A stretch of 64,000 nt of DNA from positions 9,176,001-9,240,000 of the forward strand of contig NC_087259.1 of NCBI RefSeq assembly GCF_037042905.1, in the 5' to 3' direction. This document shows, piece after piece, positions 401 through 16,700 of the stretch. This stretch comes from Lytechinus pictus (Eukaryota). Under the pieces are notes generated by a model. That model had not been told where the DNA came from. It saw nothing but the letters and a program-made list of their open reading frames with translations, and did not search any database. The number at the start of each line of letters is the position of its first letter. The stretch's first letter is position 1. The translations under genes and the position numbers were made by a program.

Positions 401-596
401 CGCCATCGGCGGCATCAAGCAACATAGCCCTGCTGGAACGCGAGGCATCAGAAAGAGGACCGCTGGTGATGGTATGGGGTTTGGACCGGTAGCCCGCGGG
501 CTGGAGACTTCGGCGAGATCGTGAGAGGCACCCCTGCGTGCAGCGGGAGCCCGAGTCGTTGTTGTCACAGATCAGAATTGAGCAGTGGACGTAGAC
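401..596 (-). CDS. Gene A exon 31: ZP-C end, furin site, external hydrophobic patch
   Basis: tttcag|[65 protein letters not shown]|gtgagt; 196 nt, phase 0-1. Confidence 0.9.
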
Positions 597-1689
597 CTGA
601 AACGAGAATATACACCAGGAATCACTATGATTTTAAAAGGTAAGACATTACTTTAGGCTTTGATATCCTGATATCAGACACTTGACCTCATATACCAATG
701 AATTATGAAATCCGAAAATAGAGTAGAGCCTAGGCCTAGCCATGTTTTTAACAAATATGGATCTGGATGTAATACAGGTCTCACGCGCGTAAAACATTCC
801 CCCATAGACTTGTGTGTTAAAATGGCACTTAAGAAAAATTCATAAAAAATAAATGTGAAATTAGAGGGTCGAATGTTTACTACCTTTGGATAGGATATAT
901 ATCTGACATTCCATATCTGACCAGAGAAGGGTATCGTAGCCAGCTCATTTTAAAAATAAATCGCCATTTATGAAGATAACTATGATGGGATCAAATTCAT
1001 CAACTGAAACAGTAAAATAGCCCCAATTCTTCCGCCAGTCAAAAAATAGTTCCAAATCATTGATATATCTTCCCAATTTGGGCAAAGGAAGTTCAGTAGT
1101 TACCATTTCTAGAATCAGTGTTAGATTTTGAATCATATTCATACACTTTTGTCAATCAGCAATATCAAATTGAAAAAATTCGAATGGGTTGGGTCGAACG
1201 AATATCTTTAGCCCTCCTGATGTAATTAGGCTCATGGCACCTATATTATATGACCTATGAATTTTATTTTTTTAAATAGCTACTTTGCTATTCTTTTATA
1301 TCTGTACACTCACACTAGCACAAAGAAATGCATTGAAAATGCCTATTTTCTATGCAATGACCCATTTTAATGTGTTACTCATACATGTTATATTCACTAT
1401 ATGGATGTCTACATATCCTACCTGCATATAGCCCAATGGGTGAATGTAATGACAATATATATAGGCCCCTATTCTCCTAGTTATATAATGGTGTATGTAA
1501 ATTTTGTGTAGATATCAGGATACCATAACTGCCCCAAACATAATTACCAGATATACATGAAATTGAATGAGGAAACAAAAGAATGAGAACATATTACTAA
1601 TTAGTACATTTGCACTTGACCTATTATATCAAAATCTTCCTAGGGCTATTGCCTATCAGATGTAAGAAGGAAGAGATACATAAATAGAT

Positions 1690-1724
<35 letters not shown>

Positions 1725-4700
1725 AAGAAAGATAATTTTATAGATGGCATGGCTTATAAAGAGGGGGGGGGGGGCTAGACTAAGATTGGAGCACACAGCC
1801 GCCACCCCCCCCTCCCTCCTTAGTTGAGCACTATTAGATACCTTACCTTACTCTGTGCCTTTTTCTAAATACCTTCTTGAAGGTACCACTCTAGTTCTCT
1901 TCAGTAAAGTTCACAAAGTTCTATTTCCTCTCTACCCCATTCCAAAGAACAATTTTAACATCAGCATTTGTAAAGGTCTTTCTAACATTAAGTAGGTGAT
2001 CATACATTAGCACAAACCAATGATGAATCAGAACATAAAGAGGCCTAGACTCTCATTGACCAGTCTATATGCATTCCTAGGCTTACATACACATACCTAC
2101 TAACTTTACCTGATATATAGCCTTGCTAAGCCATTAAATCCATTTTTGCACCACTTGATGACTAAACATATTGATATCAGTTAGAAATTGTTTGCTACTG
2201 AGGAGTTTGGGCAGGTATTCCATCCACTATAGGGAACTCGCCTGTATTACCTATAGGTCTCACGCGCGTAAAACATTCCCCCATAGACTTGTGTGTTAAA
2301 ATGGCACTTAAGAAAAATTCATAAAAAATAAATGTGAAATTAGAGGGTCGAATGTTTACTACCTTTGGATAGGATATATATCTGACATTCCATATCTGAC
2401 CAGAGAAGGGTATCGTAGCCAGCTCATTTTAAAAATAAATCGCCATTTATGAAGATAACTATGATGGGATCAAATTCATCAACTGAAACAGTAAAATAGC
2501 CCCAATTCTTCCGCCAGTCAAAAAATAGTTCCAAATCATTGATATATCTTCCCAATTTGGGCAAAGGAAGTTCAGTAGTTACCATTTCTAGAATCAGTGT
2601 TAGATTTTGAATCATATTCATACACTTTTGTCAATCAGCAATATCAAATTGAAAAAAATCGAATGGGTTGGGTCGAACGAATATCTTTAGCCCTCCTGAT
2701 GTAATTAGGCTCATGGCACCTACAGTGCAGGACCGTTAGGTATAATGCACCGGGTTAGGAGAGGGCGCAAATGAGTTTAGTCGAAACGTAGGTGGCTTTC
2801 TTCGATCTTGGCTTTAAACACCTCTGGTGATGTACTGCTGACAACTTCGTTAGGGAGTTGATTCCAGGCCAACGTTGTATCCCCCCAAAAAAAAAAAATT
2901 CTTAACTGCTCTGTGTTACAATGTCTTATTGAGAAACACTTGGAGTTATTTGTAACTTGTTTCTCTACCACATTAGTAGCATCAAAGTTTACAAATTTCT
3001 TAGCTTTGATATTACGTTTAGGTCTTGCTTTAATAAGAAATTTATCAACAGGAAATATGCATTTGCATAGGGCCCGTCCCTGAAAGGGGAATGAAACCTT
3101 TGGAACAAGTAGGCTTGTGTCGAAACAAAACAATCAAAGAATAAGAACAAAAAAAGTTTGAGAAAAATCGGACAAATAATGAGAAAGTTATGAGCATTTG
3201 AATATTGCAATCAATAATGCCATGGAGATCCTCCCATTGGCAATGCGACAAGGATGTGGGATGTCACATGTGAACAACTTTCCCTTTGATGGACTATAAA
3301 ATACCCCAAAAATGTATTTTTTGCTTTTTATTATGGTAATACAAACTCTTTATCCATGATATATTCTTAGAAAATCTGTTTTACATGCCCTCCTATAAAC
3401 AGAATACATGATCTCCTGATAGATGTGATAAAAGAGGCAATTTAAGTGAAATATATACTAAAGTAATGGGGAGAGTTGTTCACAAGTGACATCACACATC
3501 TTTGTCGCATTGCTAGTGTTATGATCTCCTTAGCATCAGTGATCACAATAGCTCCATGATTCACATGCTCATAACTTTCTCATTATTTGTCCGATTTTTC
3601 TCAAACCTTCGTTAATCTGTTTCTATGATTTTTCTGTTTTCACACAAGCTATCTTGTTTCAAAGGTTTCATTTTCCTTTAAGTTCTAAAGTGTAAAATCT
3701 TGGCCTACTTCTCTGTCTAATTGTAGGCCTGTAGACTCTAATAGGACATCGGCTAAACTGATTTGGCCTAATATCAATTAGTCGACTTGCCGTTTTGTCT
3801 AAACTACACTTGGGGTCCCGTTGCATAAAAGATGCTATCATGGTGACGTTGCCATCCAATGGTAACTACCATGATAACAACGCTTATCGGCCAATCAGAA
3901 TCGAGGATTTCAGGGAAGATATCATTGAATTGCAAAGTTACCATATTTTACGCAACCGGACTTGGGTTTATACCGAATATCTAATTCTCATTTAATGTCT
4001 AGTTGGTCTTTATTTATTTATTTATTTAGTTATTCATTTATTTATTTGTTTTCTTTTATACTGCAGGGTAGGTCTGTTCAGTTATGCAAAACTGCTTTCC
4101 AAATGCGCCCTGCAGTTAAACAAATAACTCAACATCATAGCAATTCAATTTACCGGTATGTAACATACAAAAAAGTAAAAACAGAATATATAGAGTGAAT
4201 CAGCAACTATCATGGAATCGTTACATCTACATCAAGTTATTCAGTGCAAGGGTCGATCCTTAATGCCATATCGTCATATTAAAAATGCAACTACTAATGT
4301 ATGTGTATTCAATCAAAACGAAATCAACTTGCTCAGAATCTCATGAATTCACCTTTTGTGGTTTTTTTTAAAGTTTCCCTTGCGCCATCTAAGGAATTAT
4401 TTGTTTTCGCAGAAACGTTACTCCAAGGGCCCATATCTTAAGACAATCTTGCAATATCAGTATTTTATAACTAAATAAATTATTCTCTTGGTGGGCAGAT
4501 ACTGAACTTGTTATACGCATTTGTTATTTAAAGCAATATTTAATACATGCATGTGCATATTAATAATTTTTACCACGTAAGCACATCGGAAGTGTAAAGA
4601 GCGGAAATCTTGTAATGATCGGCCTAGTAATTTTCCAAGATTTAAAGTTGGTAATGTGGCATAATGGTGACACGACATTTTCTCCGGCGACAATTGTTCC

Positions 4701-13700: not shown

Positions 13701-16700
13701 CCTTTGAGTATTAATCAGTATCAATAAAGTATCAATTTCATTGAAAAAGGATTTGCAAATATGTTTACAAACTCAAGTAGGATTATGACCTCATTGGCTT
13801 CTGGGGTTCATTCATTGCATTTCATGCCTTACTTTGGCGCAAATCAATATTTACATCACTGCAAAGAATACATCCTGATCATCCAAGCGTTAATACATAC
13901 CACATAAATATGGTATCACATTCTTGGGAGAAAATACTCTTTTCAGTCATATAAAATGATTATGCGTTCGTTACATATTTTTTCCTTAAACTGGTGATTT
14001 GTGAGGTGTCAATTTTGTATTATTCACACGGTATATACAATTACATGTGGTAAAAGTTTATGCATAATGATTCGCCATCTAACACTGATTCTAGGAAGGA
14101 TAATCACTGAACTTCCTTTGTCCAAATGAGAAAGAAATGTGACTGCGGAACAAATATGACTATTTTACAGTTTCATGTGATGAATGGGATTTCGTCACAA
14201 GATGTTCTCATAAATGCCAATTTATTTTCAAAATGAACATACCCTTTTTTGGGCAGATATAATATGTTCTATCCACTGCTAGTTATCCATAAGTCCCTCT
14301 GATTTCATCCTTTTTTGCGATTTTTTAAAAGTGCTGTTTTAATACATATCAACACACGTGTCTATGGGGGAATGTCAAAAAAGGAAACAGCTTATTCATA
14401 GCAAAACATACACACCCTCACACACACACACACTTAAAATGAACTAATATGCCCCCCAAAAAACGGTTGGCACCTCTGTATAATGTACATTTTTAACAAA
14501 ATTTAAGTCAGAGTATGGTCATTCTCATAAGAACAAGCACAGTGTGCATTCTGTCTTGAGCGACCCACCTTCCCTATTATGAACAGTGACCCGTGTGATT
14601 AAGAGACTCTCATGTACATACTGAAACTTCTTAAATGTTATGTTTAACAACCCTGATTTGGGATTATGAATAGCCGCCCTATGGCCCCAACAATTGTGAA
14701 TATAACGACCCTGATCTCATTTTGAATTTGCGCACCTTGTGAATCGTCAGCCAAGCTGCAGCTGGGGTAATAATATCCAAGTCCTTTGGAAGCGCATAGA
14801 GACATTATTCATAATCGTGATATGCGCTATACAAGAACTGTATATTATTATTATTATTATCATGATAACGGTTCTTATGAAATATGACCCCCTTCCCGTT
14901 TTATGAATAATTGGCTTTTCCCTTCAAAAGAATAAGAAATATCGAAACAAGGTCGATTTCTGTATAATATAGCTCAAATAAAAGAAGTTATACCAACTTC
15001 CTTTACGAATGTAAACATAGAATAGTACACTGATCTTTATTTGTAAGTACTTCAAAGATACAATCTAGACATTATTCCTGCATTGTTAAACACAAAAGAT
15101 TTAACAGAATCATTCTGTAAATTCTTAAAACAGGAATCTTTCTTTCTCTTATGAATAAATATAGAGATTTCAGCGTTTATCTGTTTCTTTCTCATTTTAA
15201 TTTTTCGGCGATCACGTTTAACATTGCAATTTAAAACGGGCATATAAGCGAACTTAGCGCAATGTAAACTATAAAAATAAAACTCGTTGTCCATTGAGCA
15301 TGAAAACAGAGGCCAACAAAAGTAGATCCTGTGACTAACTGGCCTTTAATATTTTATTTACGGAAAAACCAAGGAAACCCATCAACATTTCTTTAATATT
15401 AATTCAATGTAAACAAAATAGTGTGAGCTCGATCCTATCCAGGTACTAATGTGGGACCAAAGTGTTAAAGTGTGTCACGATAGAGTTAATAATTATGGCC
15501 CACATTGCACCCTTTGATATGTCATATTCTCACCATCATTAGCGCATCGTATTCCAATGTCGTCATAATGGTTGCAATGGTTTACGCCCACGCCATCGTG
15601 ACTGCAGTAGAAAATGCTGGATTCGTTCCCGGTGCAATACACGTGATTGAGCAAGATGTCGCCACTTCCCTCCCCAAAGTAGGCGTTATGGAATACTATT
15701 TCTGCGGATGAATATCCTAGACTTCTACAGACCACGTCTGCTTCGTCCATGCCCCAGCCATGATCGCAAACAGTGCCCCAGGATTCCCCGTGGAAGACTT
15801 CAAGTCGTCCTTCGGCGGGGGTGGTACCATTGACCAGCCGAACTGTCATGAGGATCAATAAGCATACACCAACCTTTTTATTTTAAATGAAATTGATTGT
15901 ATTTAAAACTTATACCGGGTGGGTGTTTCATAAAGCTGTTCGTAAGATACGAATGACTTTACGCACGACAGGTAACCCTTTGTCATGCCAAGCGATATAT
16001 CCCTATGTAATTGAGTTAGGACTAAGATCATGTTCCAGTCATGCGTAAAGTTGTGCGTAACTTAACGAACAGCTTTATGAAAACCCACCTGGTTTTTTGC
16101 AGAAATGAACTATCTGAAAGTAACAAAACAGTCACATGGTTTCACATCGTAAGTCTTCAATATTTTGCCAAATTTGAAAGATCATTTTGTGACACATAAA
16201 CCTTCTTTTTTTTTTACTTGTTTTGACATTCTTGGAAGCAGACTCTCACCAAAAAAATCCAAGGCGGTGTATATATATATATACTTTTTTTCGTATATAT
16301 TAATAATCTATACCTATGTTCAACTGGTACATAATTATGATTCTTCCCTTTGGATCCATTAATAACAGAGTCAACTGATAAAAACTGGCCAGAAGATGTT
16401 AGAAGTTGGAAACATGAAAAGAGCAAGAAAATATTCTGTATAAAAAAATACGGGAGAGAAAGAAATCGGTAGTGATTACCATTTTGGAGGCATCTGACCC
16501 CAATATCATCATAATGGTAGCAGTGGTTGTTGCCAACACCGTAGTGGCTGCAGTCAAATATACTTCCCTCGTGTCCCATGCATGTCACATGATTGAGAAG
16601 AATAGGCCCTGTGCCCTGCCCGAAGTAGGCATTATAGACATGTCCAATATCTCCTGGGAACCCAAGACTTCTGCATACGACGTAAGAATTCGTGCTGTAC

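What the first reader, a model, noticed from the sequence alone, without database searches (positions are those of the whole stretch)
773..2724. Cointegrate-like insertion: TACA-[R]-TATA-cargo-TATA-[R]-TACA with swapped target-site tetramers
Seen: two 465-bp direct repeats with one difference. The outer flanks are both TACA and the inner flanks are both TATA. Removing the unit restores a continuous LINE-like 3' end (minus strand ggtcctgcacTGTAttacatccagatcc), so the 1.94 kb appears to have arrived as one block. It has no TG..CA, PBS or PPT, so it is not an ordinary LTR/TRIM. R has only weak TIRs (GGTCTCACGCGC vs GGTGCCATGAGC) and also occurs solo and diverged at ~14065-14376. Inference: the pattern is what results when a circle carrying R at a TATA site fuses with a chromosomal R at a TACA site, or from replicative cointegrate formation (IS26-like translocatable unit). 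A composite transposon is the alternative. Either route lets a non-autonomous animal element carry ~1 kb of unrelated DNA.
Basis: partly seen in the sequence, partly recalled or inferred. Interest (0 to 1): 0.72.

Follow-up and report, generated by a model that had tools for sequence, protein, structure and literature searches.

The report
Known KolobokP transposon copy, non-autonomous
The 1.95-kb "repeat-cargo-repeat" block is a real single insertion, but it is an ordinary non-coding copy of KolobokP, a DNA-transposon lineage published in 2022 from this same sea urchin, whose members always carry two ~465-bp direct end repeats around their own TATA-bounded core.

Summary
The structure is as described: TACA, R (777-1241), TATA, core (1246-2251), TATA, R (2256-2720), TACA. 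The two R copies differ at one base.

The cointegrate reading fails. The same R-TATA-core-TATA-R unit occurs at many other loci. Each copy has its own 4-bp target-site duplication (TACT, AGCA, CTTG, TGAA and others), while the inner TATA never changes. The inner tetramers are therefore fixed element sequence, not a second target site. Their likeness to this copy's TACA is chance plus a weak TNNA target preference.

The "cargo" is a repeat found wherever the element is found, not unrelated DNA.

All structural hallmarks match KolobokP (Kojima and Bao 2022, PMC9587614):
- ~450-bp long terminal direct repeats (LTDRs) with GG...CC ends and short imperfect inverted repeats
- 4-bp duplications
- solo LTDRs, multimers, and core-core junctions that keep a single TATA

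That paper lists KolobokP-N1 and KolobokP-N2 from Lytechinus pictus. Its printed consensus sequences match R and the core by eye. Two earlier reports of this scan reached the same family on other DNA of this genome.

Verdict: already known, low interest.

The parts
773..776 (.). Left copy of the 4-bp target-site duplication (TACA)
   Evidence: The same tetramer lies at 2721-2724. 14 of the 17 aligned monomers, this copy included, have their own matching 4-bp duplication, and one further copy (ATCG) was seen.
777..1241 (+).
   Evidence: Solo copies have exact ends and 4-bp duplications. By eye it matches the published KolobokP-N1/N2B_LyPi LTDR consensus.
1242..2255 (+). Internal region (INT): TATA, then a 1006-bp non-coding core with a (GA)n run and a G-run/C-run hairpin, then TATA. 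No ORF longer than 49 aa lies inside it.
   Evidence: It is a multi-copy sequence always bounded by TATA. By eye it matches the published KolobokP-N1/N2_LyPi INT consensus.
2256..2720 (+). Right LTDR, 465 bp, one difference from the left one (2658 A versus 1179 T)
2721..2724 (.). Right copy of the target-site duplication (TACA). It is also the first four bases matched by the flanking multi-copy repeat.
14052..14375 (-). Old, diverged LTDR-like relic (68% identical to R positions 18-374), with no recognisable ends
   Evidence: About 2000 candidate places in the genome resemble it, and the scored ones are about 67-77% identical to it.

Best explanation
This is one non-autonomous monomer of the KolobokP lineage of Kolobok DNA transposons, in the KolobokP-N1/N2_LyPi group described from Lytechinus pictus. 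Its layout is LTDR-INT-LTDR.

Each 465-bp LTDR carries the transposase-recognised ends: GG...CC termini and a short imperfect inverted repeat. The left end of the left LTDR and the right end of the right LTDR therefore look like the two ends of a single LTDR. From this I infer that a KolobokP DDD/E transposase supplied in trans moved the whole 1944-bp unit and made a staggered 4-bp cut at TACA.

The inner TATA tetramers are a fixed part of the core. The core is the non-coding remnant of both ends of the autonomous element's internal region.

Shown here: the architecture, the family-wide 4-bp duplications, the fixed TATA, and the existence of solo LTDRs and multimers. Inferred from the literature: the enzyme and the transposition chemistry.
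For: Family behaviour
- 17 clean monomers were aligned, this copy included. 14 have perfect, locus-specific 4-bp duplications (TACA, TACT, AGCA, ATAA, AGTA, CTTG, CTAA, TGTA, TATG, ATCA, TCAA, TGAA, TACA, TCAA), and the inner tetramers are TATA in nearly all. One further copy (ATCG) was seen.
- 18 of 23 solo R copies have perfect 4-bp duplications of varied sequence at exactly the GG...CC ends.
- Exact-word counts in the genome: R 5' end 119, R-TATA-core junction 44, core-TATA-core junction 4, R-NNNN-R 0.
- Tandem multimers exist, with occasional core-core joins that keep one TATA.

Match to the published family (Kojima and Bao 2022, PMC9587614)
- KolobokP has LTDRs of about 450 or 660 bp with 11-18 bp inverted repeats and RR...YY termini, TSDs of 3-5 bp, solo LTDRs, (LTDR-INT)n and LTDR-(INT)n-LTDR forms, and a core that starts and ends with TATA, with one TATA at core-core joins.
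- Its Table S1 lists KolobokP-N2_LyPi (1904 bp, LTDR 465/464, TSD 4, TIR 16) and KolobokP-N1_LyPi from L. pictus.
- The printed LTDR and INT consensus sequences match R and the core by eye, including the last ~45 bases of the LTDR and both core ends.

Autonomous-type gene in this genome
- The genome holds 106 matches to the His-Me finger endonuclease family PF05551, which autonomous KolobokP elements encode. There were 0 matches in 14 control genomes.
Against: - I could not align R and the core to the published consensus by computation. The only copy available is machine-read PDF text with stray letters, so that comparison is by eye.
- No autonomous copy with R-type LTDRs was recovered. The two long R...R spacings found are nested insertions, and the insert in L062 is a LINE.
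- An exact 23-base LTDR-end word did not fall near any His-Me hit on the listed contigs C1-C21 and part of C94; 157 further matches were not listed.
- Both LTDRs of a monomer share subfamily variants, which simple cut-and-paste of a composite does not by itself explain.
Confidence: 0.93

Rival explanations
1. The monomer formed at this locus in two steps, which is the first reader's model and Fig. 5b1 of the KolobokP paper. A solo LTDR first inserted at TACA. Later an extrachromosomal LTDR-INT circle recombined with it, giving LTDR-INT-LTDR with the old duplication unchanged. It would still be a KolobokP element.
For: The end product is identical in sequence to whole-unit transposition, so this locus alone cannot exclude it. 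The authors propose such circles. Solo LTDRs are common. A few monomers have rather different LTDR pairs: L044 with 12 differences, and L047 with 7 differences, 3 of them at informative sites.
Against: Recombination between a circle's LTDR and a resident LTDR would make the two resulting LTDRs differ at every site where the parents differed. The family mean between copies is 1.9%, about 9 sites. Here they differ at 1 site. In 10 of 17 monomers no other sampled copy is closer to either LTDR than its partner is. The tetramer 'swap' is not evidence for this model, because TATA is fixed family-wide.
Confidence: 0.05
2. It is a non-autonomous LTR retrotransposon (TRIM/LARD-like). The two R copies would be LTRs regenerated from one RNA template by reverse transcription and inserted by an integrase.
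For: This was my working model up. It rested on the 4-bp duplications, on solo repeats with matching duplications, on intra-element R pairs being closer (0.9%) than inter-element pairs (1.9%), on all subfamily variants being shared by both R copies of an element, and on no site separating 5' from 3' R copies.
Against: The termini are GG...CC with a 12-16 bp imperfect inverted repeat rather than TG...CA. There is no TGG primer-binding site after R1 and no purine tract before R2 in any of the 17 copies. Core-core joins without a repeat between them occur. No R-flanked element with reverse transcriptase was found. R and the core match by eye the published consensus of a family whose autonomous member encodes a DDD/E transposase.
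Confidence: 0.02

Closest known systems
KolobokP-N2_LyPi and KolobokP-N1_LyPi (non-autonomous KolobokP families of Lytechinus pictus; Kojima and Bao, Mob DNA 2022;13:24, PMC9587614)
   Same: Same species. LTDRs of 464-465 bp, TSD of 4 bp, imperfect TIR of 12-16 bp, GG...CC ends, a core of about 1 kb starting and ending with TATA, and the (GA)n and G-run features inside the core. The LTDR ends and both core ends agree by eye with the printed consensus.
   Different: This copy is 1944 bp against the 1904-bp N2 consensus. The difference is mostly in simple-repeat lengths. Its LTDR and core look closer to the N1/N2B variants than to N2 proper. The published N1 core reads as a core dimer with a ~580-bp insert, whereas this copy has a single core. 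No computed alignment was possible.
[quoted passage not shown]
   Same: Homologous LTDR of 466/467 bp. Its core starts and ends with sequence recognisably related to the two ends of this core (by eye).
   Different: This copy has no coding capacity; the longest ORF inside the core is 49 aa. It must be mobilised in trans.
Bacterial composite transposons and IS26 translocatable units
   Same: Two direct copies of a terminal module, each with its own inverted-repeat ends, bracket a middle segment. The modules also occur solo. The family's authors discuss circular one-module-plus-core intermediates.
   Different: Here the transposase is encoded in the middle of the autonomous form, not in the flanking modules. 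The inner tetramers are fixed sequence, not locus-specific target duplications. No cointegrate signature was found at this locus.
TRIM and LARD non-autonomous LTR retrotransposons
   Same: Direct terminal repeats, short duplications, solo repeats, tandem multimers and concordant repeat pairs.
   Different: No TG...CA, no primer-binding site and no polypurine tract. The repeats have terminal inverted repeats. The partner enzyme is a DNA transposase, according to the literature.

Membership tests
KolobokP (Kolobok superfamily DNA transposons) | LTDR-INT-LTDR architecture with direct terminal repeats | tested here: met
   R 777-1241 and R 2256-2720 lie in direct orientation around a 1014-bp core. 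The same layout is seen at 16 other aligned loci.
KolobokP (Kolobok superfamily DNA transposons) | LTDR length constrained to about 450 bp or about 660 bp | tested here: met
   The LTDR is 465 bp. Table S1 gives 464-467 bp for the L. pictus families.
KolobokP (Kolobok superfamily DNA transposons) | Termini 5'-RR...YY-3' and short (11-18 bp) perfect or imperfect TIRs on each LTDR | tested here: met
   The ends are GG...CC. 8 of the first 12 and 11 of the first 16 terminal bases are complementary. The ends are fixed by the duplications of 18 solo copies.
KolobokP (Kolobok superfamily DNA transposons) | TSDs of 3-5 bp without strong target specificity (4 bp for the L. pictus families) | tested here: met
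   The duplication is 4 bp in 14 of 17 aligned monomers and 18 of 23 solo LTDRs, with varied sequence. There is only a weak T at position 1 (15 of 33) and A at position 4 (20 of 33).
KolobokP (Kolobok superfamily DNA transposons) | Solo LTDRs, (LTDR-INT)n multimers and LTDR-(INT)n-LTDR forms, with core-core joins that keep one TATA | tested here: met
   Solo copies are shown. Arrays lie at C7:31.69-31.72 Mb, C9:14.32 Mb and C3:68.97 Mb, with core-TATA-core joins.
KolobokP (Kolobok superfamily DNA transposons) | Sequence homology to the published KolobokP-N1/N2_LyPi consensus | tested here: met
   Compared by eye only, against machine-read PDF text that contains stray letters. The LTDR 3' end of about 45 bases, the LTDR 5' part, the core start and the core end all agree. 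No computed alignment was made.
KolobokP (Kolobok superfamily DNA transposons) | [quoted passage not shown] | tested here: inconclusive
   PF05551 gives 106 matches in this genome and 0 in 14 controls. None could be tied to an R-type LTDR by an exact 23-base word. The transposase itself was not searched for. The paper reports 10 complete KolobokP-1_LyPi copies.
LTR retrotransposon (TRIM/LARD) | TG...CA LTR termini, a tRNA primer-binding site after the 5' LTR and a polypurine tract before the 3' LTR | tested here: not met
   The termini are GG...CC. The core starts TATATTATATGACC and ends TGTATTACCTATA in all 17 aligned copies, with no TGG and no purine run adjacent to the repeats.
IS26-like cointegrate or translocatable-unit product formed at this locus | Inner tetramers are a second, locus-specific target site | tested here: not met
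   The inner tetramers are TATA in nearly all of the other copies, whatever the outer duplication.

The most novel reading that the evidence does not exclude
The two LTDRs of KolobokP monomers are kept alike. Every subfamily-defining variant sits in both LTDRs of an element. The intra-element difference is 0.9% against 1.9% between elements. The C7 multimer also shares its LTDR haplotype with four dispersed monomers and four solo copies. If this is more than shared ancestry plus gene conversion, it would mean that new monomers are regularly regenerated from a single-LTDR template, either a homogenised multimer or an LTDR-INT circle. That would be the first sequence-level evidence for the replication pathway that the family's authors could only propose.
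Probability: 0.2. Interest if true: 0.4.

Novelty: already known. Interest (0 to 1): 0.1.

Why it matters
For this locus it matters little. It is a routine copy of a published transposon family lying in intergenic or repeat DNA, and it should be masked as KolobokP in annotation.

The general lesson is that a tetramer shared by the two inner junctions of a repeat-core-repeat unit cannot be read as a target-site duplication until other copies have been checked.

The family itself remains mechanistically open: whether it uses cut-and-paste or a circular intermediate, what the His-Me nuclease does, and why multimers form. The concordance of LTDR pairs seen here is a small datum bearing on that question.

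Tried and rejected
1. LTR/TRIM model. I held this until on the strength of the 4-bp duplications and concordant repeat pairs. I dropped it because there is no TG..CA, primer-binding site or polypurine tract, and because the KolobokP paper describes exactly this architecture in this species.

2. Search for an autonomous partner through unusual R...R spacings. Only two were found. One has a 3.2-kb insert in the core with no long ORF (L061). The other has a LINE with APE and RT domains inserted in an R (L062).

3. Linking the His-Me nuclease loci to R-type LTDRs with an exact 23-base LTDR-end word. There was no co-location on any listed contig, C1-C21 and part of C94. The word instead revealed long 1445-bp-period arrays of the non-autonomous family.

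4. Rfam scan of 500-3100. It gave only sub-threshold miRNA-like hits on the G-run/C-run hairpin at 1747-1833.

For that reason the empty paralogous site, the old R-like family and the 4461-bp arrays were not inspected.

7. No computed alignment to the published consensus was made. That consensus exists here only as typed, machine-read text with no reference id.
Full report
**Observation**

- TACA at 773-776
- a 465-bp repeat R at 777-1241
- TATA at 1242-1245
- a 1006-bp middle segment at 1246-2251
- TATA at 2252-2255
- a second R at 2256-2720
- TACA at 2721-2724

The two R copies differ at one base, T at 1179 against A at 2658. The R ends are GG...CC, with an imperfect inverted repeat of 8 of 12 and 11 of 16 bases. 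A 68%-identical relic of R lies at 14052-14375 on the minus strand. There is no TG..CA, no TGG-type primer-binding site after the first R, and no purine tract before the second R. No ORF longer than 65 aa lies within the unit; the 65-aa ORF is inside each R, and the longest ORF inside the core is 49 aa.

**The unit is a family, not a one-off**

A search of the window's own genome found R and the middle segment as abundant repeats, with 2721 and 1375 first-look candidates. In the fetched loci the same R-TATA-core-TATA-R unit recurs.

17 clean monomers were aligned, this copy included. 14 have a perfect 4-bp duplication that differs from locus to locus: TACA, TACT, AGCA, ATAA, AGTA, CTTG, CTAA, TGTA, TATG, ATCA, TCAA, TGAA, TACA and TCAA. 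One further copy, with ATCG, was seen. The inner tetramers are TATA in nearly all of them.

Solo R copies end exactly at GG...CC, and 18 of 23 have perfect 4-bp duplications of varied sequence.

Exact-word counts in the genome:

| Word | Count |
|---|---|
| R 5' end | 119 |
| R-TATA-core junction | 44 |
| core-TATA-core junction | 4 |
| R-NNNN-R | 0 |

Tandem multimers of R plus core occur on C7 (31.69-31.72 Mb), C9 and C3, and occasional core-core joins in them keep a single TATA. Target sites show only a weak T at position 1 and A at position 4.

The inner TATA pair is therefore fixed element sequence. Its likeness to this copy's TACA duplication carries no information about a second target site.

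**First working model and why it changed**

The 4-bp duplications and solo copies suggested a non-autonomous LTR element. Several results supported that model:
- The two R copies of an element are closer to each other (mean 0.9%) than R copies of different elements are (1.9%). In 10 of 17 elements no other sampled copy is closer to either R than its partner is.
- No alignment column separates 5' from 3' R copies.
- Every subfamily haplotype is carried by both R copies of an element and also by solo copies.
- Substitution-only diversity is similar in R (about 1-4%) and in the core (about 2-6%), so the two evolve together.

But the termini, the inverted repeats, the missing priming sites and the core-core joins do not fit reverse transcription. 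No R-flanked coding element turned up either. The only two long R...R spacings are nested insertions, and the one in L062 is a LINE with endonuclease and reverse-transcriptase domains.

**Identification**

A literature search led to Kojima and Bao 2022 (Mob DNA 13:24, PMC9587614). They describe KolobokP, a Kolobok DNA-transposon lineage with a composite-like LTDR-INT-LTDR architecture:
- LTDRs of about 450 or about 660 bp
- RR...YY termini
- their own 11-18 bp inverted repeats
- duplications of 3-5 bp
- abundant solo LTDRs
- (LTDR-INT)n multimers and LTDR-(INT)n-LTDR forms

Lytechinus pictus is one of the listed hosts. Earlier notes of this scan name this genome as L. pictus.

Table S1 of the paper gives these L. 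pictus families:

| Family | Length | LTDR | TSD | TIR |
|---|---|---|---|---|
| KolobokP-1_LyPi | 4984 bp | 466/467 | 4 | 16 |
| KolobokP-N1_LyPi | 3486 bp | 464/465 | 4 | 12 |
| KolobokP-N2_LyPi | 1904 bp | 465/464 | 4 | 16 |
| KolobokP-N2BDR_LyPi | LTDR only | 461 | 4 | 16 |

The printed consensus sequences are machine-read PDF text with stray letters. By eye they match R over its 5' part and its last ~45 bases, and they match the core at both ends and through the (GA)n and G-run region. This copy's LTDR and core look closest to the N1/N2B variants. The published N1 core reads as a core dimer in which one core carries a ~580-bp insert. That arrangement is also seen in loci L042, L043 and L048.

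The autonomous KolobokP-1_LyPi core begins and ends with sequence recognisably related to the two ends of this core. The 'cargo' is therefore the non-coding remnant of the element's own interior, not captured DNA.

**Mechanism**

Shown here: the whole 1944-bp unit sits between a 4-bp duplication, as do its siblings elsewhere.

Inferred from the family's biology: a KolobokP DDD/E transposase supplied in trans recognises the left end of the left LTDR and the right end of the right LTDR. These are the same ends as those of a solo LTDR. It then inserts the unit at a staggered 4-bp cut.

The genome holds 106 matches to the His-Me finger endonuclease family PF05551 that autonomous KolobokP elements encode. 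Most are 143-146-aa open frames in tandem arrays of about 4461 and 4348 bp period, and none appear in 14 control genomes. I could not tie these to R-type LTDRs.

It gives the same end product and cannot be excluded for this locus. However, it predicts that the two LTDRs differ wherever the two parents differed. Here they differ at one site.

**A small extra**

All eight LTDRs sampled from the C7 multimer carry the same subfamily haplotype as four dispersed monomers (L019, L054, L057, L058) and four solo copies. This is compatible with multimers serving as sources of monomers whose two LTDRs are alike. It could equally be shared ancestry.

**Flanks**

The right flank 2721-2960 is a repeat. 48 candidate matches were found and 40 scored, and most of the scored matches start at query base 1, the TACA. 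The left flank is nearly unique. The element therefore lies at the edge of that repeat. 'Restores a continuous LINE-like 3' end' is only partly borne out.

**Limits**

- Reads could not be consulted.
- No further genome DNA could be fetched.
- No computed alignment to the published consensus was possible.

**Verdict**

The element is already known. Two earlier reports of this scan, on other DNA of the same genome, reached the same family.

Noticed in passing
G000 C8:21258305-21295988, C5:35922827-35969261, and unplaced contigs C109, C157, C174, C200, C214, C219, C273, C361: There are 106 matches to the His-Me finger endonuclease family PF05551. Most are intact 143-146-aa frames in long tandem arrays with periods of about 4461 bp and about 4348 bp. 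These are possibly multimers of autonomous KolobokP, but no exact R-type LTDR-end word falls in the arrays on C5 or C8.
   Followed up: partly
G000 C94:1209-67673 and C17:18038817-18050348: These are long arrays with a 1445-bp period of the LTDR variant ending CTCGTGGCACC. At least 47 units fill the unplaced contig C94. This is satellite-like multimerisation of the non-autonomous family.
   Followed up: no
window 2721-2960: This is a repeat with 48 candidate matches in the genome, most of which start at the TACA at 2721 and are up to 96% identical. Read on the minus strand it ends ...CCTGCACTGTA, and the window also has an A-run at 2886-2899. Its class was not determined.
   Followed up: partly
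window 3080-3682: Nested inverted repeats lie here: arms 3080-3203 with 3559-3682 (84% complementary) and 3203-3284 with 3469-3550 (82%). This looks like a foldback or MITE-like element next to the insertion. The ~580-bp insert in the published KolobokP-N1_LyPi core resembles this sequence by eye.
   Followed up: no
L062:3988-8283 (G000 C2:35.286-35.291 Mb): A LINE with an intact 1019-aa ORF (Exo_endo_phos plus RVT_1 domains) is inserted into an LTDR at about position 43.
   Followed up: partly
L051 (G000 C12:11.066 Mb): This is a core-LTDR form lacking the left LTDR. It reads TATA-core-TATA-LTDR-TATA. This is what the KolobokP paper attributes to excision of one LTDR together with a 3-4 bp micro-deletion.
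   Followed up: no
window 1747-1833: A G-run and C-run hairpin sits inside the core and draws only sub-threshold miRNA-model hits. It is conserved, with length variation, across copies.
   Followed up: no
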